Source: Ophelia neglecta
Taxonomy: Eukaryota
DNA: 64,000 nt
Assembly: GCA_965285935.1 (NCBI GenBank)
Contig: OZ260661.1
Span: 56,606,001 to 56,670,000 of the forward strand
Direction of reading: 5' to 3'
In this document: one piece after another, positions 3,035 through 41,500 of the stretch
How positions within the stretch are numbered: position 1 is the first letter of the stretch
Layout: each line of letters opens with the position of its first letter
Notes under the pieces: model-generated
The model's database searches: none
Told to the model about the DNA's origin: nothing
What the model saw: only the letters and a program-made list of their open reading frames with translations
Program-made: the position numbers and the translations under genes

Positions 3035-6000
3035 ATGCCTTTACCCGCGGCATTGGCAGCTAGACTAGCTAAGAGGGGAATCGTTTCCACCCCTCCAACA
3101 CCCCCTGCTCCTAAGAAGGGTAAGGAATAAATAATTAACAGGGGACGATCATTCATTGTGATCGGGGGTGGCGGGGGTGGGGGGGGGGTTCTTTTCATAT
3201 ATACAGGACACTCTTTTCAAGCCCTGGTGAATATGTCAATTCTTAATTTAACCCTTTCAACATATACCCTAAACTTCACATTGTTTCTGCTATGCCCTGC
3301 ACTCATCATTGTATTTAAACTCCTTGCTTTTGTGTTTTTGCTGTCCTGGAGTCTACCTCATGTATAAAAGCCTGTTAATTCTCTTTATTACTTATTACGG
3401 TATGCTTGGGCCACCTGTTTCCACGCGATGCCTCATGGGATAATAGGAGGGGATAGAAAAAAAAGCAACGGCTTACAAATGGCTATACATTATGGTTACT
3501 GAATTTAATGCCTGGAGTTTGCTTGGTACTAGAAATTCACCGAGGAATGCACACAAACGATGTGTGGCATCTCGTCTAAAAGTCTAGCGCTGCATGGTAG
3601 GCCTGCTACGTTCTGTGTGCTTGAGAAATCGGTCCCCTGTAGGCTCAGGGACTTCCGGGAACGTAACTAGTGAAAGTGGTAATCATTGTTGAAGAGAATT
3701 ATGTACATATATTTCTGTTCCTTAATCAAACTGTAGAAATTAATGTAAAATCTATACTTATATTTTATCATTACACTCAACAGCTTCAGTCAACGATCAG
3801 GTTGAAGAAGTCTTTGCTGAAGACTACGATGAACATCCACCTGAACAACCAAAGAAAGTTAGAGATGATGGTGGTAGTGACAGCGAAGATGATGACCGAG
3901 AAATTATTCATGATTCTATTGCTTGTCCTAATAAATCAAACCCATACCACCAGTGTGTGGCATTCTGCCATGAGAAATGGGGAGCTCATGAGTTTGAGCC
4001 AAAAGTAAGCATGAAAAGGAAAAAAGATCGAATGCTTAAAAAATATCCTTTACCAGAAGGATGGGTTGAAGTTGGGGATCCTGAAACGTAAGTTGATTTT
4101 CTCAGTAGGAATGCCAAATTTCAGTGATCTAGTTTGAACACTTATTAATAACTAATAGGTTTATTTCTCAGAAATATTGCCAACAGATTTATTCAAGCTG
4201 ACCCCCCCCCCCCCTCTCCCATAGGCTGTCGTTATCTGGTACGGCCCCTGTGTACTACCAATAAGTACACGTTGCTTATTGGTAGTACACAGGGGCCGTA
4301 CCAGATAACGACAGCCTATGCCCTCTCCCACCTGCTTTAGGAGTGGGGCGGGATGGGTGCATGAAGAGACACACTTTTAACTGTGGCAGTTTGCCAGAAA
4401 CACTTAAATAGATAAAATGTTCACTATATGATTTTTTTCATAGTAAAGCAGAATATGAAAGGTATGGGTAATAATATTCTGTTTATACTTTCAGGAACAG
4501 ATATTATTACTGGAACACAGAAACAGATGAAGTGTCCTGGCTCTCACCAAAACATCCGCGGGCTAAAGTGTCCTTGTCAGCAGATGTACTCAAACGTAGG
4601 CACACTCTCATTTAACTAAATATTATATTACTGTTCAAGTTGCCATATCATGTAATTGTTCTATTTGTAATTATTTGGACATTTAATTCCTTTTCAACAA
4701 GCCTACAATCAATTTAAATGTACAGTCTACCCACAGTTAACCACCAACATCAGGACTTTATTATTTAAAGTGGTAGTTGGGCAAGGATGGAAAATAATCC
4801 GGGGTTGATAATGGGCTTTGGTTAATGACACAATTCACAAGGATTTCAGGCCCACTTTAGCTACACACGCCCTTCAAGACATAAGCCAATGCAAAACTTG
4901 CTTAATCTTTCTTAAAATACACCAGAAATCATGATCACATTAATGATACATACTGATTAAAATAAGTTTCAAGAAATTAGTGTGCGTATGTCCCTCACAT
5001 TGATTCCCTTGCAGTGCGGGACTGGGGCTAACGTTATCTTTTAACCTTAGTAACAAATTCAGCCAGTGCTCAACACTGCACTTGTAAAGATTGATGGTCT
5101 AGCTGCCTTTTGCTTGGCCCGTAATCCGGCAATGTCAAAGGCTGTGGCAACCATGTGTCCAGCTGAAGCCTAATTTGCATACATATGGCTGAGAAGGTGC
5201 AAAAATATCCACGTGGGTTTTTAGAATGTGCTTTTATTTTTTTTGCAGTCCCGTTACTTTATACCTGTTGGTGTTTATTAATTAATTTAATTGCCATGCA
5301 GGGTCAACTCAGCGACTTGGTGGACAGCTGGGAGGATCAGAAGAAAGTGAGAGTGAGAGTGATGAAGATGAGGAGAAGGAGATGGACCTCGACATGGATG
5401 TGAGTGTCTTGTGCTGAGAATATATGTACCACAATGTATTTATCAGTCATAAATTTAGCAAATTTGGTAGTTAAAGGCCAACATTGGAAATTAAAAAGTG
5501 CATAAGAAAAATATGCCCAATGACCGAGCATGAGGTTTGTGTCATACAAGAAAACATTATTTGAGAGCACACTGATGTAAACTGGAACCAAAAAAACAAT
5601 AATAAATTAATCTTTTATTGTTTGAATCAAAATAGTATTTTTGTTTTATTTTTCCTTCTAAGGATGAAGACTTTGAAAAGTTGGAGAGAGAAATAATGAG
5701 AGAGAAGCAAGAAAATGAAGAGAGGAGACAAAGTAGCAGAGGCGGCCGAAGTAAGCTTTGGTTAACTAATGTGACACCTAAAAATAGCTATAAAGCCCAG
5801 AAAGTCTTCACCTGTAAAAGTCTCTTTACCAGTAACTAGTCCAGAAACACACACTTTACTGTTACTTTGATTAATACCAAATTGAGTATTACAATGATAA
5901 TTTCTATGTATTTGAAGCTTTTCACGAAGCAAACCATGTTTACCATACATGTACATTCCTAAAGGTAATTGCAGACTTGGCATATAATTATGACACAAGA

Positions 6001-8920: not shown

Positions 8921-11500
8921 TTAGGCCAGTCCGAAGCCTTCTGAACATTCATGTATAGCCGTCAGCATCTGTTTTCTTAACTTGTCATATGTTTCATAAG
9001 CAGGCAAGTCCAACTGGTTGAAACTGAAAATAGTAAAGTAAAAAATAGTGAAAATATGAACTAGAGCTCTACACATAAAATTTTAACTTAAAACTTCCAC
9101 CATTATACTGACTCATACTGTTCAATTTAGTGCAGTAAATTAAAGAAAACAACAGCCATTCGTACCACGTGTGAGCACAAGGCAGTCTATCAGTTGATCG
9201 GTCGTCCTTGTGAATCTGGAATTTCTGTGTGCCGTTCATGCCCTCTAGGAAGGCAAAGCCTTGTAGGGGCACCTTGGATGTACCGGTCACAAACTGTAAG
9301 AAGCAGGCCCTCTCCGCCTGGTCGAATGATCGCAGGGCTCGCCAAAACCATTGGATCTGCAAGGAAATTCACACAAGGTTTAACAACAATCACTTTAAGC
9401 TATGGCACTGGTCCTTATCAAAATGGCAGGCTCATAAAAAAAATTTCCATTTGAATCAAAAGTCCTCAATATTCGAAGTTTTACTACAGTGGTATGGTTA
9501 TTATCTTTTATTAAGAGTAGTTTTGTAACTGATTAAATATATTCCTCATAATAAAGATGGACCGAACCATTTCTGTTTTATACTTTGATTGGCAGATTGG
9601 TCAAATAACTTTCTATACAAATACTATTTCTAAGTCTGGCAGACATATATCATGGAGCGTATGAATTGGCTGGCTCACCTGCAGCGAGTTGATTTGGTAT
9701 TTATGATATTCGGTGTTGGCCTTGAGGTCGTCGATGTCGATGGTTGGCAGGCCAGAGATGAGCAGCTCCAGCTCCTGCTCGTTGAAAATGGAGATCAGCC
9801 TCTTGGGTATGATATCGTAGAAACCCTCTAGAAACCCGTTCAGCTGTTTGCGAATGGCGCCCGTCATTTTCATCTGACACACCAGGTTGACATATTCCTT
9901 CTTATTCTCCTCCGTCACCTTGATGTTTGCCCCATTGGGTTTCAGTTCCCGGGCTTCCGTTACTCCGAACTCTTGGATCTGTCCGGGTAACAAACAGGAG
10001 AGTTAGGATCTCAGATTAAGAAGGCTGTAGATATACGACATGTTCATACATTGTTCTGGTTACCTCAGGCTTCAGCCAGAAGGAAGACTTTACCTCTGTG
10101 TCTTTATACACAAATATAATGAATTCAAATCGATACAGTAGAGTTTAAAACTTTGAACAGTTAAACATTCCAATGGTATTGTTTCCTCACCTCTGTGCTG
10201 AACATCAGATCATAACCCAAATCCACAACATTATTTTCAAGCAAGAAAACTAGCCCCTGGTAAAACGCATAATCTTCACTCTCCATGTCAATATATCTGC
10301 AATGTATATCACATGGTTAATAAAAGATACCACATTCAAACACTATAGATAATCAGATAAAAATCAGATCAGACGCCAAATACATGCTGAGGTAAGAGGA
10401 GGGTGTCTTACTTGACAGGGACTCCCAGGATGTGTTTGTAGAAGGAGCGTGTGAAGTAGCATTCCAGCAGCTTATTGTCATAGATGGCCTTGGCAATGAT
10501 ACGGCCGACAAACTTGAAGTAGCTCAGGTGATTGGTGTTACAGTGTGAGGCGGGGTTGATAGTGTAGGTCACACGGTCACCCGACGAGGTGGAGAAAAGG
10601 GCGTACATGGGATTGAAGATCTCACGAGAGATGATGATATACCACTCACGTAGTAGCCCACCCGCATCCTGGCCTTCCTCCCCTGAATAACAAAACACCT
10701 ACATGTCAGAATTCACCATCAGGTTTTAATACAACCAACTACTTAAATCATTAACCTTTTTTACATGAATAAGATTTAAACATATTTAATTAACTGTAAT
10801 AAAAAGGTATTCCAATCATATACACAGGTGACAGAGATGGTGCATTTCTTCCACCGGTTAAAAGACAAAGTTCAAATACAAAGAAGATAAACAAGACTTA
10901 GTGCTTAAGGGAGTTATAAAAAGGTTAACTGAAGTTACCTATGCTATAGCATCTAAATTGTTACATAAAATTAATCTCAGGCCATAAATGTATTTCTGTA
11001 GACAACAATTTTTGTAGGCTTAGCCAATGCCGGGTTAACACCATTTCAAAGTGATAGCATCGTAAGTAGACTAGGCCATTTCATATCACCACACACTTTT
11101 CTTTAAAAAAAGTCGCATGCAATAAACTAAGGTGTCTGATAGGGAATAGCCCTGAAGACAGAATACTTCAATCATCAGGAAAATAACAACCATGTTCTTA
11201 TAGCACTTGAGGTAAGTTTCACTAGCATACATTGGCCAGGAAACCTTTCAAAAAGTGCACATCTTCCCCCCCCCCCCCTGGTGGGTTACTATACCTTCAA
11301 ATACAATGTAGAATCTGTGTTTCCATTCGTCCTGATTCCTCCTGTGTAGCTCCCTGAAGGAATCCTCAAAGACGTGTTCTCTCCTGACATGTACTGCCAG
11401 GTCTTCCCGCCTCAGCCCTTCGTCCATACGCTCCAGCTCCTGCCGGAAGTATCTACGCTTCACATCAAAGTCTAACACCTTGGTGTGGTCTACAAGGACC
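8921..11500 (-). other. HECT catalytic domain exons of HUWE1
   Basis: [39 protein letters not shown]; the catalytic Cys codon is split across the 9166/9023 junction (AHT-C-FNQLDLP). Confidence 0.95.
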
Positions 11501-26500: not shown

Positions 26501-29500
26501 TATTCCATTTGTCCCCAGGGGAGGGCCTGAACAGACACTTGTTGGGGGGAAGAGGTATAATCCAAAAATCAGTATAAATATAAAGGGGGTTCAAGAACTT
26601 ACAATTTAGAGGGAGGGGGGAGACAAATTTCTTCAGGCCTACCCCCTCTACATTTTAAATGGATTAGCACTACCATGCAAGTTACAACTTTCAGCATCAA
26701 TTTAGGTGAATTTAAAGTTTTATAGCAAACAATTGTAAGACATTCTGAACAACATATTTGAAGTTCCATATGACATAAAAATGTATACTAAAGTTTTGAA
26801 TCATAGCTGCACATAATTTGGATTTATAATAATAACTTGATATTTAGAGATAGGTGTGTTACTATGATGCCTTGCATATTGCAATGTGGTACTTTACTTC
26901 ATAGATGAAGCCCTTTATAACGGCACACTTGCCTCGGCTATGAGTTCCGACTGTCCAGCATGATATGTGTGTTGTGTGATGAGACTTGCACATCCCGCAT
27001 ATGATTTGATTAACTCCGCAAGCAGTCTCATGATTGCCGACTTGGGCAGAAGGGGGCGCTGCTTTTTCTCATTCTCCTCTTTTTGCTTGGCGTCCTTGAT
27101 CTTTTCAGCAGCCGATTGAGAATCTTCGGAGGCAGTGTCGGGCCGGTCCTCACTGGTTCCCTGGGTAACCTGAATGAAGTAACACAGTTAGGTTGGTCTC
27201 TCCAGACTGTATCTGGTCACTAAATACAGTGAAACCTGCCTTAAAGACCACCTCTATATTGAGACCACCTGTCAATTTAGACCACAAATATGAAGACCCT
27301 ACTGTGCATTTTCAATGTATACTAACCAGTCTAAACAGACCACCTCTATAATCAGACGAACATTTTACAGTCCCTTGGGTGGTCTCAATTGACAGGTTTA
27401 ACTGTACATTATATACTGGTGAGGACTTTACCTGGGCCTCTCCCTCAGCAGCTGGTAACTCCGGCGTGTTGTCCTGCTGTAACAGATGTTGTCGCTCGGT
27501 GATCTCCCGAGACACTTCATTCATCACCTCCTGTATGGCCTCGGCCAGCGTCTGAGCAGTCTTTACTTCAGGACCACTGCCTACAATTGAAGGAGGCTAC
27601 ATCATTAAACCAGTTTGCAACAATTAATATTAAAATGGTAGATAATGTGAATATACAAATTGTGGTACATATTTGTGTAACAACCGGTGGTCTCAGCGGG
27701 GTTTGAACTCACTACCCTTGGTTCTCCAGCCAACAACTCTACCAAGTTTACAAAGGGGTAACCCCTCTAGCCAAGCTAGTAGGAGTGTTGTGATCATGCA
27801 CCAGTGGCCACGACCTGCTCATTCATCTCTGTTACATTTGTATCCAGCCCATGAACTGCTAAAAATTATTGGTAATATGAATCAAGAGTAAAGAATATGG
27901 CTTCTAACAGTGTATTTCACATTTTTTATCACTGCCCACAGATCAATAACCACCGATCACCAAGTTCAATCATTCCCCACAGATCACTACTCATTGATAT
28001 CTGACTGGAGTTATTATTACAGACAAACACATTGCTCATGCCACCCTCCCCCCTACTTGAGATAATAACTGGTCCTGTTGTCTCCTACCTTCTGAGGTTT
28101 TCCAGGAGTACTTGACCGAGAGGCTGTCCAGCAGATCAGTGAGAACCTCCCTGATGTGACCCTCCAGCTCAGGCACCGGCGACACCTTACTAGGAACACA
28201 TTTGATCAGCTGGGGAGTGGCTGGACTTGTTAGCCGCACCTCATCTTCATCTGAAATATCAATACATTGTAATATGTAAATATATATAGAATAAAAACAA
28301 TGCCTTTTAGCATTTTCATTTGATAAAAGGAGAAAAACAATACTTTATATTATTTTTACAAAAAGACAATTTGATTGTTTATTTTTTAAAGCCTAGACCT
28401 AATTGTTTCTACTAGAGGCGTACCTCGTTTGGCAGGTGGAGGCAGAGCTATTCTCAGTGTTGATATAGCCACCTCCTGCAGAATTTCGGGGTTCCTGCAG
28501 GCTGCAGGGGTTAACACCTTCAGTACATAGTGTAACTCTTTGGATCCCATGCTGCCCTGGTCGACCCCGCTCATGCTGGAGCCGGCCCCAGTCGTAGAGG
28601 ATCTAATTACCTGCATAGTAAATAGGAACAATTGATTGAGCAAGAAACCTCACAGAATGTGAAATAGAACCAAACCACTTACAACGCTCAGAAATAGTGT
28701 TCAGCACAATATTATCAGTTATATGCTTGTCTGTGGTTGTTCATCACTGAGTTGTGGTATATAGCTAATCCTTGCTGTTTTTCCATGAAGGCGTGTCTTA
28801 CCTTTTCCAGTGTGTGTTTCAGTGACTTGGGTTCCTCCAGGATGTGTCGGAGGATGAGCGTTGTGAGTGAGGTGAAGCCTTGGAAGCTGGATGACTGCGT
28901 CAGGCCCAGCAGTAACTTTGGTCCCCCAAGCTCGGCAAAGAGCAGCGCGTGCTGGTGCAGTCTGGTCAGACGAAGGGTGAGCCTCATGACGGCGTGGAGG
29001 GTGTCTGGCTCGACGGGGATACCGATCAGGCCCACGGCCGAGCGTATCACACTCGACACCTGGTCAGGACCCAGACCCTTACAAATGTGTAACTCTGGCA
29101 TCTCAATGCTCTCATCAGTCTCCATCTTAGTACCAACATCTACAACAGCAAGGACACAAACTTGTATAACATACTTTATATATGTACATTTATATATTTA
29201 TATATTACAATGGTCTGTCAAATTTTTATACCAGAAACTAATGAGACTGATAAGAGGTATAATTTAATAACAACATAGGACAACTCCAAGCTAAAAGAAG
29301 ATACACTGACTCGCCCATTTGATGAAATAAAAACAAAATCTTTGTTTCCAATTTTAATATTTGTTTTTCCATGGTTAACTTAAACCAAGCCTACCTTTCT
29401 CTGTGGTTTCAGATTTTAACTTTTCTGTTTCTTTTTCTTTTTTGCCATCTTTCTTCACATTGTCCTTTTCCTTGTCCTCCTTGACAGGCAGGGAGAGCAT

Positions 29501-32500: not shown

Positions 32501-35500
32501 TTCATCTTCCCCTAATGTGAGTTGAACACCACTTTCACTTGAAGCAGTACTTTAAATATGTTTGAAACATATCCTTGATAAATTTTATATAGTATATTAA
32601 ATTTCGATTGAACCTTGTCTCTCAGTTCAGATTTCAGAAATTTATCTCCATAGCCCACTAGAGGATGACATTACATTAGCCATACACAATTACTGGTTCC
32701 CACCGAAAATAAATGTAGGAAATACATAGTTACACAAATCTGTGGGTTTTCATGGCTGCCTGTCATACAGGGAAAATAAGGCTTGACATTTCAAAATATG
32801 CAGCAGCCACACAAGTTCTCCATTCAAAAATATGATATTTTTCCTAGTATAAATGTTTATAAAAAGAACTGCCTTCTAGGTGACATAAAATACTGTATTA
32901 GAACCAGTGCAAGTCTGACTGTCACCTCAGAAAGCAGAAGTGCATATGTGACAGATAAACCAAAAGTAGTAATCAAAGCAAACCTAGACGAGATAACTGA
33001 CAGGCCTGTATCTAAAGGACTTGGCTGTGGTGTCAGTTTGTGATGTTAAGTCAGGTATAGGTTACTCTGTTTACAGTGAACACTAATGTCCCAGTCATAT
33101 ACTAACCGGTGGCGCCCCTGGAGCTGGCGTGGGTACTGGAGGTACTGGGTGTGTTAGTATGTAGTCCGTGGCCGACTCCAGGCTAGAGGTGTGGGTCAGG
33201 GCCTCGTTGGCATGCTCCCGGGTAAAACCCATGTCCACCAGCTGTAAAGATATATCAAACAGGGCTAGGTCGAGTCCAAAAAAGTTTTACTACAATAAAA
33301 TGGAATATTTCAAAATTGTGTTTGGAAGTAACCAAATACAAACAAGAACATTACAAACACAACTTCCAAAAATCAATACTGACTATACACACAAAACAAA
33401 TATTGAGTCATAACCAGAACAATAATTTGAAAAAATATGTATTAAACAGGATCAGCTCTATATAAACTGTCTGTCATAACTGGTTGCCTGTCAAAAAAAA
33501 GATTCCAGTTTGGGAGTCAGTGTGTTTTTTTAGTACCTGTTGTAGGTGCTCCGGGTTGGGTGGGTGCTCCTCCCGAGGATCCCGGGGTAGGGGCACAGAT
33601 ATAGACCCCCTGCCTGAGCCCGGGGCTGATCCAGGCTGGGAGGCAGGGGCCGAGGCTGTGGAGGAGGGACCGGGGGCGTTCTTCTCTGCCTCGGCCCTCT
33701 CCTTCTCTAACTTCTCCTGTAGAGTATACCAGAAACAACTTGTACATAGGAGAAATGAAGGGCAACAACTGACTCCTGGACAAAGATAATAACATCAGTG
33801 TGTAAGTCAACTCTGGAGAGGAACACACAAAATCTCAGATCGGCAAATAGTTTCAAGACTATCTTGAGCTTGCGCCCAACTCTTGACATATTTAGTCATC
33901 ATTGATTCATTCCAGATAAGATCTATTTAACTTCTGTGGTGCTCTAGTACTGACAATATGTTCTCTTGACTGACTCCCTATGATCGGTGAAGGCCTTAAT
34001 TTGAGTTTAATAAACAATATAAATCTTGATTTAGTACATACCATTATGACTTGCTCTCCCTTGATGATATGACACAGGATAGCCAGAATGGATTCCGACA
34101 TTCTTCCTCCGTATATTTTCAAAGGCTTCTTGTTCCACAGGTGCATCACAGATTTAAAGGCCATCTGTAAAGTATAAAACATGGCCTGTATTTCTACTGA
34201 AATCAGTCTGACCAGCATAAGAGAGGACAAATACCCAGGTGATCTGAGCTGTGGTAAGATGATCAGCTTGTAACCCACCTGAGGGGTGTGTATGAGGTAA
34301 TGTAACCCACCTTATGGGTGTGTATGAGGTATTGTAACCCACCTTATGGGTGTGTATCAGGTATTGTGACCCACCTTATGGGTGTGTATGAGGTATTGTA
34401 ACCCACCTTATGGGTGTGTATGAGGTATTGTTACCCACCTTATGGGTGTGTATGAGGTATTGTAACCCACCTTATGGGTGTGTATGAGGTATTGCAGAGG
34501 ATTGAATGCTACAAATCCGGGCTGGGTAGACTTGGCTGGCAGTGTGTGAGCAGTCTCCAGAACATTCTTGGTGTTTACCATCTTCTCCACCAACATCAAC
34601 CAGGCATCAAGAAATTCACCTGTACCATCTGCAACAATATCTGTATATTAGATATTTAATTCAAAAGGTTATTAAATAAAATCCCAATACAAGTTTTTCA
34701 ATAAGAATAAGTTTTGGTAGTTAACCAATTTTTAGACTACAACTTAGATCTCAGATCGGCAAATAGTTTCAAGAACATTTGGAACTTGCGCTCCATTCTT
34801 GACATATTTAGTCATCATAGATTCATTTTCATCATATGATTTAATCTTTAATAGCCATTTTTGTTTACTGAAGGGATACTCAAAATAAATTTACCATACA
34901 AGTCTTCACTTTCCAGTCCTTCATCTAAACTCAATTTCCCCCCACACGACAATGCCCAACGGAATGCTCTGAAGAATAAAGAACAATCACATTGGTAAGA
35001 GTGAAAAGAAATAAAATACCTGCATCTCCTGGGACAAAGTAATTTTTGTGATGGGATCATGACTAAACCATTACTCAAGGAGTACAGATCCACAAGAGAG
35101 AGAAAGAGATAGATCAATATTCACATCTTTGATCTCAGATCGGCAAATAGTTTCAAGAATCTTAGAGCTTACGCCCAATTCTCGACATATTTAGTCATCA
35201 TAGATTCATTCAACCTAGTAATAAGATTTGGTTAATTCCTTAAAAATTGGTAACTTACTCAAACAGAGCATCTTGCCCTCCACACGATACAAATTTCTGT
35301 AACATAAGGTGATATGGAAATTTCTTCTCGTCAAATAACATGGGTGAGGTGAAGCCCACCGAGCAGATAAAGAAGGTCAGTCTACAAAATAAATGTAGTC
35401 CATTATATAAACAGGAGTTCAGGGAAACATAAAAGCTTTTAAAGGTTTAAACACCATCCACATATAGCGTTTTTAACTATAAATTACAGCCCCATTTTAA

Positions 35501-38500
35501 GCCTAACTATAATAGTTACCTTAGTTTGGGGGCTGGAGAGCATTCCGGAGGAGACCATGACAGCCCTTGTGCCAGCAGGTTTGTGAGTGCCCCGGCCACA
35601 GCCCGTGCAGCCTGGGTGGGAGTGGAGGGAGCCGGGAGGAGCTGCTGGGTGCGTCGCTGGCGGACAGGAGAGCCCACACTGGACTTCACCAGCAGCCCAA
35701 ATAACTCAGCCAGAGCACGCCCCAGTCGTGACGATGCCGACAACAGAGGCTTGATCTGTTTGATCTGTGCCTGCAGTATAGGAGACATTTTTCCTTTCTT
35801 GCTGGTCAGATCTGATGAGTGGCTTTCCTCAGTGTCCATTGGTATGCTGTGGTTTTCTGAAGTAGACAGTGATTCCATGGCTGCACTTACTCCATTACTA
35901 CCCAGCTCACCAACACCGCGATTCAGAGTCCCAGAACTTTCAGCTTTGTGGATTTCCTCTGGCTGGCTATCCTTGCCATCCAGCTTAATGTCTTTTGGGA
36001 GGATTCTTTCCAAATCAGCCTTGCCAAATTCACATCCCGGGGGTAGTATATCCTCGCTACAGAATGCTAACAGTACTGTGCTTTCCCATACAAGTGAAGT
36101 GTACAGTTTAGAGAGTCCATTGAGCACCTGGAGGCCTAGGTCTGACCCCCAATGACTTACAGAGATGCTTCTAATATCACTCTGAAATGAACAAATTGTA
36201 AAGATCAGACTCAACAGGTCAATCAGCATCAATTTACTCTTCATTGATTCTTTAGGCCCAAAATTTGTGCGTCTGCTTCAAAGATGAGATTTGCCCATCA
36301 GCGATTTTGATTGAAAACTATCAAAAAATGAAGAAACCAAGCACATGTAAATCTTGAATTAATATCATTATTAGGACCCAGCTTCACCAAAGCAAAATGG
36401 GAAAACAATTTCAATACACTTTTTTCAATTTTTCAACAGAGAGGAAGGTAACCCACCTGGCCAACTTTACAGACATGGGTGAACATAGTAATATAAGCAT
36501 GGGCAGCCGAGAGGGCATGAAGGAGAGGTGTGGACTGGGCCGAGAGTGTGGGATCAGAAACACCCTGGGAGGTGGCCAGCTCTCTCAGTAACACACTGCC
36601 GCCAGGCACGTCCAGGAACCGGTGTAAAGGCTCCAGGGAACTCAGCACTGTGTCCAGGTTCATCAGGCCCTGCTTCAACACCTGGGGCTCCTGTGATAAT
36701 GTCTGGAAGCAGATTGTTGCAGGTTCAATACTAACCAACTGAATAAATGCTAAAAGAATAAGCAATATTAAGAAAGAGCAAATCCTATTCTATTTTCTAT
36801 GACTCATCTTTGATCTCAGATCGGCAAATAGTTTCAAGAAAGTATCCTTGTCATATTTAATCATCATTGAATCAAAGGGGCAAGTTATTTGCTCTCTGGG
36901 TTCCTGTTCTGAGACTTAAATCTGCTTACCAGCACAGATTTACAGACAGCCGCCACAGCCTGACAAGAAGGTGAGGCTGGGAAATCAATGGGGAGGTTGG
37001 GCAGGCCCAATATCCCCATCAGAGGAATGAGGCCTTTCTGGGTGACAAACTCCCTACAGTGATCATCTGTGGTGTTGTTACTCAAAATGGCCTCCACAAA
37101 CTTCATCTGGAACAATATATGTATTTGTACATTATGAATGCATGAAAATGTTTGATGGAGATAATAACACCAGTGCAGTCAAACTTGGGACTGAAGCATC
37201 TCAGATCGGCAAATAGTTTCAAGAACTAGCTTGAGCTTGCGCTCAAATCTTGACATATTTAGTCATCATAGATAAATGGCTCATGATAAATCAAGTGCCT
37301 GTAGAACTTAATTATTGGATGCTCTAAAACACAAAATTAAAGGCCAGCAAAATAAGTTGATTGTCTAAACAGCGACTATAATGGGTCGCAAAACATAAGG
37401 GTATTACACTGAAATCAAAGTTCCTGAAAGCAAATTCAACATAGAAATCAGATTTCTTACCACATTGAGAACATAGTCCATCAATGGAATAGCAATCCGT
37501 TCCTGGGTACTGCTTGATCTGTGGACAAAATCAAATACAAATTATCTTATTTGAAATCCCCCGAAAAAAGGATATTATTTAATATTAACCTTGATTAATT
37601 TGAGATATTTACAGAAGAATCAGAAGTTTATGATATTACTGGCCCCCAGCCAGTGAAGTGGGCAGTGCTAGGTGTTGTAGTTAGTACATACGGCTGGTCT
37701 GTGGTGGTGGGGCTGTCGGCGTCTCCCTGTTTGGAGACGGTCCCACTGTGGGTGCTGGCCACGTCGTCCTCCTCATCCTCGTCGTCAGACGACGTGGCCT
37801 CGTTGTTGACACTGGCCCTCACAGTCAGGTTAGCAGCCTGCTCCGTTTTTGGCTGGGGCTTCTGGCAAACATAGCGCTTGTCTCGGCCCATCATACAGAC
37901 CTCCTCTAGCAACTAATGTGGACAAATAAAAAGTACATATAACATCAAATAAAAGATAAGGTGACGAATGAATAACCCTTGTATTAAATAACACCTCAGT
38001 AAGACTAATCAACGCCCTCATGTATATGTCAAGGTTGGGATTTGTCATCATTGGTATGTGTCTAAAGTCAACTAGACTAACACGGTCAACTCGTTAACTG
38101 CTAATTAATATTGATCTAGGCTGACCTTGATGATAGCCTTCGTGGCCTCTGTCCTCAGAGAGGGCTGATGTCTCATCAACTCATCCATAGCACTGCCCAG
38201 GCTGCTGGCTGTGTCCCCTGGAATCAAACAAGTACACTATACAAGCCATACATGAAGATCTGGAATCGTGTGTTCAAAAGAAACTGGCTATGTTCTTATA
38301 TCTGAACTATACAAAGCTGGCATATTTTCTCTTAAATCTGGTATGTAAGACTTACCAGGAGGATCTGAGCTCCTTCGCCGTCTCATGGCTGGTAGGTAGT
38401 CAGGGGAGAGAAGCACCTTGAAGAGTCTGTCAAAAGGCTTACACTGGACAAACGCCTCCAAACCCCGGTTGTTCAGACACAACGCACTAAACACATTGGG

Positions 38501-41500
38501 AAGGGAGGCCAACACCTCACGTGTGGCGGGCACCTGCAACATCAAGATTGAAGATAAATTTTAAGACAAAACTGTCAAGAGGCAAAAAAAAATATCTTAC
38601 AAATCAGCAAGCCCATTCAAAGCTTCCATAGTTGTTGTCATTATACGTGCAATATTTTTTTTTTTTTTGCAGCTGAACTGTTTCTATTTTCAGAAGAAAA
38701 AAGACCAACACTAGGACAATGAGCTTACATCTTTGACTAGCAGAGCTTGTAGAACCACATCTGTCAGTCCATTGTCTTGTAGAGAGGACAGCAAGGAGGG
38801 CTCTTGGAATACATAGACTGTTACCACATCTGTAGCTGGAAAACACATAGCAACAATTAACATAGCTTGAAAATACTGTGTAGGCCAACATCCAAATGAG
38901 CATGGTATATAAATAATATATTTATAGCCAATACATTAGACCAGTTGTAAATATGCAGGGAAGGTGAAACACACATAATTTGCAACCCCCTCATCAACAT
39001 GCTATTCTCCCTATGTCTGCTGCACACGACTGCCCCAATGAGTGGGGGTACTGCGAAAAACAAGGTCACCTCTCCTGTCTCCATTTAACTAGAATCACTC
39101 TTTAATATGTAATGCTCAGGGACAATAAATAATACTGCCAATTACAAGAAAATACAGTGTAACTAAAACTTACCCAGTAAGAACAGAGAAGGACCGTAGT
39201 ATTCAGAATTACTTATTATATGCTTCAGAGACCTTGGCAGGGACCCATCCATCACTGAAAATAACACAATTCATTACCAGTATAGAACATATGTCAAGAG
39301 ACAGATCAACTGATCTTGTTGAGGTTAAAACATCACATAATAAATTTGCCATTATTTTATTTAAAAAAAAAGCTGTTTGTAATAAAGTAACTTACAATGC
39401 CGAATACTGTCTGAAAAGGCTGGGTCAGGAATTGCTTTCTTCAAAAAATTGAGCATTGATTTCAAAAGGGCAGCCCTTTGTGGAAAACATACAGGAACTG
39501 GAAGTTGAAGATAAAAGTAAGAGGTCAGTTCACAGGTTATTAGCAGTGAATATATAATGTGGGACTAAACATACTATATGCCTCTACTGTCAGGTGGAGG
39601 AACATATATAAATATTAATTAACAGTCAAAGGGGATCATTAAGCCAGAGGAAAACAAGTAGACAATAAGAGTAAGCCAGAGAGTTATGATCAAATACATA
39701 ATGGAAAATGACAGTAGATATATAATTTGTTGCATCTGACAAACATATAGACAAGTCACCTTTGCCGTCGGCAGACTTGATGGGCTGGAGTAGCACCTGG
39801 TCATCACTCTCACCAGATGTGGACGCCCCATGGTTGACGTCACTGCCACCTGCCTCCGTCTCCATGGCAACCTCGGTGGTGCCTCCTGGTGACATTGGTA
39901 ATGTGTCAATGCTCATCACAGACTCGCTTCTCTTAGGTCGGATCACAAATGGCTGCTCTTTTCTACAAATGTCTACCTCGTGCTACAGATAAATGGGTCT
40001 AATTAATCCATCTTGATATAAAATAATCAATTTATAGTATCTTTAATTCTGCAATTCCTTTAGTCTAATATTTTTTGTTGGTTTTAAATGAAGAGGAAAG
40101 TGCCATACCTCTAATCTATTGATAAATGCTGATAGGCCGCCATGCGATTGGAAAGCCTGCATGTCTAAGTTGGTAATGAGATCAACCACTCGAACAGCTC
40201 TGGTTACAAACTACAAACATATCAATTGAATATTACACAAGTTAGAACATCAAAATGTTTATTAATGAAGGAAACTTAATGGGTTAGTGATACACAGTGA
40301 AACCTGCCTATTCCAAACGCTTGAACAACACAATGTACACATTAAATGTTAAATAGCCAAACCACCTCTTCAATCAGAGCAGTATTTTAAGGTGGTCTTA
40401 ATTCACAGGTTTTGCCGTTTTTTAAATAATCTGTACTGTACTGTACTGTACTGTACTGTACAAGTTCAACTTACAGTAATGTGTTCTTGTCCATCTCCAA
40501 ACCAGTTAATAACTTTAAGTAGTGATTCCATCATACCACAGGAGACAAGGGCTTCTCCACCTGATACAAGAAACCGCAAGTCCAGCTTAATGTTAACTTT
40601 ATATTACCCCAAAACAAATACACATGGTACAAGAAAAATACATCATACACATCAGCAAGACTAATCAAAGCTTCCATATTGAAATCAAGGATATTTGTTG
40701 TCATCATCATAGGTGTAACTGTACAAGAGTCATTAAGTGGGCCTATTTTAATTTATTGGGCATTTGATATTTCACATAGTAATTTGGTTAGAAAAAAACC
40801 TTGTCTTACCATTCTCATAGCTAGCAAGATGATAAAGAAAGGAGAACAAAGCCGTTGCAAATGGCTGGAAGAAGGGCTCCAAATCAGGTTCTGAAGAAAT
40901 AAAAAAGTCCAGCAATTCAATTTATAATTCAACTAAGATATTGCCATTTTATCTAAAATAAGTTTTAGGACCTTAGTCTTAGTTTGTGTCAAAGAGGAGA
41001 CTTAATATATGTCATGCACTGGTATGGCTAAACATACCTATTTTTTTTTTTTATCGTAGTATCAATGTAGGTTCAATATTGAATATGTTTTAAACATAAA
41101 TATAATAATTGAAGACTAATTTCCATGACTTTCTGTTATAGTTTAGATGAAAGGTATTATGTAATTCTTAATTAACCCACATTGCCCCTGTCATTATAAA
41201 TAAGTATGTTTGATATAAGCACAAAAAGTTCAATTATGCTTGGTCTGATTGTCTACAACAAAAGGAGACTGTACCGGTCATATGTTGAATACAGGTTCTG
41301 ACTAATACAGGCAGGAAGCCGTGGTAGGAGGCAGCACCTGTAGCCTCAATAATGTTGTTTAATCTGAAAGAAGCAGTGCATTGCTAGTCATCTACATAAT
41401 TGATCTAGATATACACCAAAAAATTTAATACTATAAATTAAGTGATCATAGAAAATAAGCAAAAGTTCTCTAATACCTCGGATGCCTGTCCAGATTGATG

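What the first reader, a model, noticed from the sequence alone, without database searches (positions are those of the whole stretch)
33831..37273. Five intronic copies of an unusual C/D-box RNA with an invariant guide and a GNRA-capped central hairpin
Seen: one copy per intron in five nearby HUWE1 introns, sense orientation, about 75-165 nt upstream of the acceptor. Each reads AUC-N-AUGAUGA...CUGA-GAU (the 5' stem is altered in copy 4). The block UCUUGAAACUAUUUGCCGAUCUGAGAU is identical in all five, while the centre varies but keeps a stem closed by GCAA or GUAA, and no clear C'/D' boxes are present. Inference: the D-box guide could pair about 10 nt with the 28S segment GUCGGCAAAU (recalled from invertebrate GGGAAGUCGGCAAA...GAUCCG), placing a 2'-O-methyl on the second G of CGG. 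Otherwise it is an orphan guide.
Basis: partly seen in the sequence, partly recalled or inferred. Interest (0 to 1): 0.82.

Follow-up and report, generated by a model that had tools for sequence, protein, structure and literature searches.

The report
Five-copy intronic box C/D snoRNA family
Five introns of an invertebrate HUWE1 gene each carry a copy of a conserved small nucleolar guide RNA found only in this species and a close relative; it is an ordinary kind of RNA, but a new family that may add one new methyl mark to the large ribosomal RNA.

Summary
Five copies lie on the minus strand, sense to HUWE1, one per intron, 91-162 nt upstream of the acceptor. These are the only five copies in the 762-Mb genome. 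All have a C box, a D box, a terminal stem and an identical 27-nt block at the D end. Four have a central hairpin capped GCAA or GUAA. Copy 4 and its orthologue in a related species lack that hairpin.

Between the two species the snoRNA segments are 89-92% identical, while the surrounding introns no longer align, so the RNA is under selection.

No Rfam family matches. Weak similarity, mostly to the SNORD27 (U27) copy in the same gene, suggests a U27 duplicate that lost its 18S guide and gained six bases before the D box.

The D guide pairs 10 bp (one G-U) with the species' own 28S at 2163-2172, which predicts Gm2167. This match is no better than 5-17% of shuffled guides. No better target turned up in rRNA spacers or in U2, U5 or U6. 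No RNA data exist, so expression and the target are untested.

Verdict: a real, lineage-restricted box C/D snoRNA family, a new member of a known kind, with a plausible but unproven target. Other notes from this scan flag further snoRNA candidates in the same gene.

The parts
33830..33908 (-). Copy 1, in intron 34041..33717. C box 33902-33896, GCAA hairpin, D box 33838-33835.
   Evidence: (own model, 103 bits)
34747..34824 (-). Copy 2, in intron 34894..34629. C box 34818-34812, GCAA hairpin with changed stem pairs, D box 34754-34751.
35131..35207 (-). Copy 3, in intron 35258..34969. C box 35201-35195, GUAA hairpin, D box 35138-35135. Its orthologue is at L016:1644-1724.
36808..36877 (-). Copy 4, the short form without the hairpin, in intron 36929..36703. 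C box 36867-36861, D box 36819-36816, alternative 8-bp outer stem. Its orthologue at L016:153-218 is also short.
37198..37272 (-). Copy 5, in intron 37460..37107. C box 37269-37263, GCAA hairpin, D box 37204-37201. One contig of run X3 (probably the other haplotype) carries a D-box change at 37204.
28681..28755 (-). SNORD27 (U27) orthologue in a downstream HUWE1 intron, the putative parent of the family. Its D' guide pairs 12 bp with 18S 26-37.
   Evidence: (79.6 bits)

Best explanation
These are five paralogous genes for a lineage-restricted box C/D snoRNA. Each would be released from a HUWE1 intron after splicing and trimmed back to the protein-bound C/D kink-turn. Only the D-box guide works. 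The C'/D' pair has decayed to a remnant (UUGAAA) and an internal stem (CAAGA/UCUUG), topped in four copies by a GNRA hairpin. The 12-nt spacer before the D box pairs with 28S 2163-2172 and would direct fibrillarin to 2'-O-methylate G2167. By my own count from memory of the yeast and human sequences, that corresponds to yeast G1906 and human G2842. The family probably arose by duplication of the HUWE1-resident U27 gene into neighbouring introns, with loss of the 18S guide and a 6-nt insertion that created the new guide.

Shown: the anatomy, the copy number, the position and the selection.
Inferred: processing, protein binding, the target and the U27 origin.
For: - **Anatomy and location.** The copies have canonical C and D boxes, a terminal stem with a 3-nt bulge, and a sense intronic position 91-162 nt from the acceptor. 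There are only five copies in the genome, all in this gene.
- **Selection.** Orthologues in a second species are 55/60 and 67/75 identical, while the intron flanks are 75/182 and 103/332, which is near random. Among the seven copies compared, the guide block never varies although the centre does. Allelic differences mostly avoid the conserved blocks.
- **Target.** There is a 10-bp duplex with the species' own 28S, with G2167 at position 5. Nothing of 9 bp or more was found in the spacers, and nothing involving the conserved guide in U6, U2 or U5.
- **Controls.** Confirmed snoRNAs of the same gene give 12-13 bp by the same scan.
- **U27 link.** A U27 model scores copy 4 at 19.3 bits, E about 0.04. 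Pairwise alignment gives p about 0.02-0.03. The family shares the ACUAUUU run after the UGAA of the window's own U27.
Against: - The duplex is short, and 5-17% of shuffled guides do as well.
- By energy, G-U-rich alternative sites score higher.
- The equivalent yeast position carries no modification: the review table lists nothing between 1888 and 2129.
- No RNA run exists for this organism.
- The 5' element UAAAUA can pair with the guide and might mask it.
- The U27 similarity is marginal, and the family's own model does not find U27.
- One haplotype of copy 5 has a damaged D box.
Confidence: 0.45

Rival explanations
1. It is a genuine, selected box C/D snoRNA, but an orphan. The 28S match is coincidental, and the conserved 20-27 nt act on another RNA (mRNA, tRNA or another non-coding RNA) or in a role other than methylation.
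For: The invariant stretch is longer than the 10 nt that pair with 28S. The 28S match is not significant on its own. The 5' element is also conserved, and pairs 10 bp (13 bp in the copy-4 type) with 28S 3626-3638 near the 3' end.
Against: A genome-wide antisense search shows no excess over the control. There is no match in U2, U5, U6 or the rRNA spacers. The extra conserved bases can be explained as the C' remnant and the internal stem.
Confidence: 0.4
2. The copies are decaying U27 duplicates with no function of their own.
For: The D' box and the 18S guide are lost. Copy 4 has lost the hairpin. Copy 5 has a D-box variant allele.
Against: Identity to the orthologues is about 90% inside introns that are otherwise unalignable. 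The guide block is identical in seven copies while the centre drifts, a pattern that gene conversion alone would not give.
Confidence: 0.08
3. It is a mobile or retroposed repeat, or a hairpin RNA unrelated to snoRNPs.
For: The whole unit can fold as one long hairpin, with z-scores from -1.3 to -3.9.
Against: There are only five copies, all sense and all in one gene. I saw no poly(A) tail or target-site duplications when reading the flanks. The C and D boxes are invariant. Covariation for the long hairpin is not significant.
Confidence: 0.03

Closest known systems
SNORD27 / U27 (Rfam RF00086)
   Same: It is an intronic box C/D snoRNA. An orthologue sits in the same gene here (28681-28755), in HUWE1 of related species (L014 with one copy, L022 with three), and on another chromosome. 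The family shares the C-box-proximal AUAUGAC/GACAAG region, a UUGAA-type C' box, and the ACUAUUU run before the D box.
   Different: The family lacks the D' box and the guide to 18S A27/A28. It has an internal stem and hairpin instead, and six extra bases before the D box. It scores 19.8 bits against an Rfam threshold of 52.
Multi-copy snoRNAs in successive introns of one protein-coding host, for example U14 in hsc70 (from my own knowledge)
   Same: There are several isoforms with the same guide, one per intron, in sense orientation.
   Different: The host is HUWE1, which the paper search did not link to any snoRNA. The family is restricted to a narrow lineage.
SNORD50 (28S C2848, G2863) and SNORD34/snR62 (28S U2824 / 25S U1888)
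   Same: These guide methylation in the same 28S segment. The published sites lie, by my own alignment, 6 and 21 nt downstream and 18 nt upstream of the predicted G.
   Different: The target nucleotide is different, there is no sequence similarity, and the predicted G is not a known site in yeast.

Membership tests
Box C/D snoRNA | C box RUGAUGA near the 5' end and D box CUGA near the 3' end | tested here: met
   AUGAUGA and CUGA are invariant in all five copies and both orthologues.
Box C/D snoRNA | Terminal stem that brings the boxes into a kink-turn | tested here: met
   AUC/GAU plus flanking pairs, with a 3-nt bulge. Copy 4 uses an 8-bp shifted stem.
Box C/D snoRNA | Internal C' and D' boxes | tested here: not met
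   Only a UUGAAA remnant is left. CAAGA/UCUUG pairs instead, and two G-U-compatible changes keep that pairing.
Box C/D snoRNA | Guide of 10 nt or more, complementary to rRNA or snRNA, with the target at the fifth position from the D box | tested here: inconclusive
   The guide pairs 10 bp (one G-U) with 28S 2163-2172, but shuffled guides reach this in about 17% of trials.
Box C/D snoRNA | Sense intronic location at a suitable distance from the 3' splice site | tested here: met
   91-162 nt from the acceptor.
Box C/D snoRNA | Stable RNA bound by fibrillarin, Nop56, Nop58 and Snu13 | not testable with these tools
   No RNA run holds the locus.
SNORD27 (RF00086) | Score above the Rfam gathering threshold | tested here: not met
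   19.8 bits against 52. There was nothing at the gathering threshold.
SNORD27 (RF00086) | D' guide to 18S A27 | tested here: not met
   The guide and the D' box are absent. The true orthologue at 28681-28755 has them.
SNORD27 (RF00086) | Sequence homology to the U27 genes of this clade | tested here: inconclusive
   A clade U27 model gives 19.3 bits, E about 0.04, for copy 4. Pairwise alignment gives p of 0.02-0.1.
Retroposed snoRNA / dispersed repeat | Many copies outside host introns, in both orientations, with poly(A) tails or target-site duplications | tested here: not met
   Five copies, all sense and all in one gene.

The most novel reading that the evidence does not exclude
This may be a recent birth of a new ribosomal methylation guide caught in the act. 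A U27 duplicate inside HUWE1 lost its old 18S guide. A 6-nt insertion lengthened the spacer before the D box to about 12 nt and created complementarity to 28S. The new gene then spread to five introns, adding a lineage-specific Gm in a 28S segment that is identical here and in yeast across the 9 Watson-Crick-paired bases of the target.
Probability: 0.3. Interest if true: 0.5.

Novelty: new member of a known kind. Interest (0 to 1): 0.33.

Why it matters
The finding adds an unannotated snoRNA family that is clearly under selection. It also shows that HUWE1, which is not a typical host gene, carries several snoRNA families in this invertebrate clade, with turnover between species. If the predicted Gm2167 is real, this is a traceable example of how a new rRNA modification guide arises from an old one. 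Otherwise it is a conserved orphan snoRNA worth a target search.

Tried and rejected
- **Rfam.** Nothing at the gathering threshold, and only chance-level hits at the E-value threshold.
- **Expression.** No RNA run holds the locus. The three runs that do hold it are genomic DNA of one sample, with no splice joints.
- **Homologues in other species.** The family model found none in the HUWE1 loci of seven more distant species or samples. An exact-match scan of metagenome contigs also found none.
- **Other targets.**
  - The external and internal rRNA spacers have no match of 9 bp or more.
  - U6, U2 and U5 have nothing involving the conserved guide.
  - A genome-wide antisense 16-mer search shows no excess over the control. 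The one tandem hit is a 3.8-kb non-coding satellite.
- **A second guide for the neighbouring A.** None of the eight loci examined has a C box.
- **Literature.** The paper searches found no snoRNA linked to HUWE1, and no use of the guide or target strings in a snoRNA context.
- **A corrected error of mine.** I first mapped the target next to the snR63/U46 site from memory. Counting against the published yeast sites showed this was wrong, and I dropped it.
- **Species identity.** It could not be established.
- **Spliced model.** Only a single exon was searched, by reference.

Full report
**What is there.** Even with three mismatches allowed it occurs nowhere else in the 762-Mb assembly.

The flanking exons carry DUF913 and UBA domains, and a search with one exon returns proteins named HUWE1. 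The gene is on the minus strand, so the copies are in sense. Reading that strand gives eight consecutive introns:
- Five introns hold one copy each.
- One intron of 138 nt is empty.
- One intron holds a tandem repeat.
- One intron holds a different, weak C/D-like candidate.

The distance from the end of each copy to the end of its intron is 91-162 nt.

**Anatomy.** Every copy has the same parts:
- AUGAUGA and CUGA boxes, and an AUC/GAU stem with a 3-nt bulge.
- A conserved 5' element after the C box.
- A stem CAAGA/UCUUG.
- A 12-nt spacer before the D box.

Two substitutions in the CAAGA strand are G-U compatible. Four copies add a 5-6 bp hairpin with a GCAA or GUAA loop. Copy 4 lacks it and has a shifted 8-bp outer stem.

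Pairs are formed in 92% of cells, against 25-49% when the partners are slid. With only one compensatory pair, covariation is not significant. No canonical C'/D' pair exists. The UUGAAA after the stem looks like a C' remnant.

**Is it functional?** One exon search led to a contig of a species whose exon is 90% identical. It carries orthologues of copy 4 (also short) and copy 3, and the start of copy 2.

The orthologous introns are otherwise unalignable. Flank identity is 75/182 and 103/332, whereas the snoRNA segments are 55/60 and 67/75 identical and the guide block is unchanged. The centre differs among paralogues while the two end blocks do not, so selection explains the pattern better than gene conversion.

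DNA contigs of one sample confirm all copies. Their allelic differences fall mainly in flanks and linkers. The exception is one haplotype of copy 5, which has a D-box change.

No RNA data exist, so expression is inferred.

**Relatives.** Rfam gives nothing at threshold. HUWE1 loci of more distant species lack the family but hold other C/D snoRNAs:
- A family whose guide pairs 12-13 bp with 28S 1114-1126. It is also present twice in this window.
- U27-type genes.

The window itself has a U27 orthologue at 28681-28755, whose guide pairs 12 bp with 18S 26-37. Three more U27 copies lie on another chromosome.

A model built from these U27 genes scores copy 4 at 19.3 bits, E about 0.04. Rfam SNORD27 gives 19.8 bits, and pairwise tests give p of 0.02-0.1. 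The family shares with the window's own U27, but not with the other U27 copies, the ACUAUUU run after the C' box, followed by six extra bases.

I read this as probable descent from the resident U27, at roughly 55-60%. It is not proven.

**Target.** I extracted the species' own 18S, 5.8S and 28S. The guide pairs with 28S 2163-2172, with a G-U at position 1 and nine Watson-Crick pairs, which puts G2167 at position 5. A bulged U would allow two more pairs.

Shuffled guides reach this score in about 17% of trials. By energy, G-U-rich sites score higher. Spacers, U2, U5 and U6, and a genome-wide antisense search gave nothing better.

Using the published yeast sites and human sites, and counting on sequences recalled from memory, the site corresponds to yeast G1906 and human G2842. 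That is 18 nt after the snR62/SNORD34 site and 6 nt before the SNORD50 C2848 site. Yeast has no modification there. The target is therefore plausible but unproven.

**Unexplained.** The 5' element can pair with the guide itself. It also pairs with 28S 3626-3638, over 10 bp, or 13 bp in the copy-4 type.

**Verdict.** This is a real, selected, lineage-restricted box C/D snoRNA family in an unusual host gene. It is a new member of a known kind.

Noticed in passing
window 28681-28755 (-): A SNORD27/U27 orthologue sits in a HUWE1 intron. Its D' guide pairs 12 bp with 18S 26-37. It falls below the Rfam gathering score. Three more copies lie at G000:C7:105.816-105.832 Mb.
   Followed up: yes
window 37990-38058 (-) and 40646-40716 (-); L014:8698-8770 and 9555-9625: A second C/D snoRNA family in HUWE1 introns, conserved in a more distant species. 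Its D guide pairs 12-13 bp with 28S 1114-1126.
   Followed up: partly
window 36205-36303 (-): A weak C/D-like candidate in the intron between copies 4 and 3 (UGAUGG ... UCUGA; Rfam snoU31b 19.4 bits, E 2.9). The relative's orthologous intron also has UGAUGA ... UCUGA, but with a different guide.
   Followed up: partly
window 34260-34500 (-): A tandem 32-nt repeat duplicates the last 22 nt of an exon plus its GU donor about six times, giving a row of potential donor sites. Contig depth spikes here.
   Followed up: no
window 37204, 37224, 37235: One contig of run X3 (probably the other haplotype) carries three differences inside copy 5, including a D-box change from CUGA to AUGA.
   Followed up: partly
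L022:3793-3864, 4464-4536, 5800-5878: In a species whose exon is 68% identical, three U27-type snoRNAs occupy the HUWE1 introns just downstream of the large exon. This is roughly where copies 3 to 1 lie in the window.
   Followed up: partly
G000:C1:55.35-55.87 Mb: A 3.8-kb tandem satellite with no ORF of 80 aa or more and no Rfam match. It holds a 13-nt antisense match to the guide, which I judge to be chance.
   Followed up: partly
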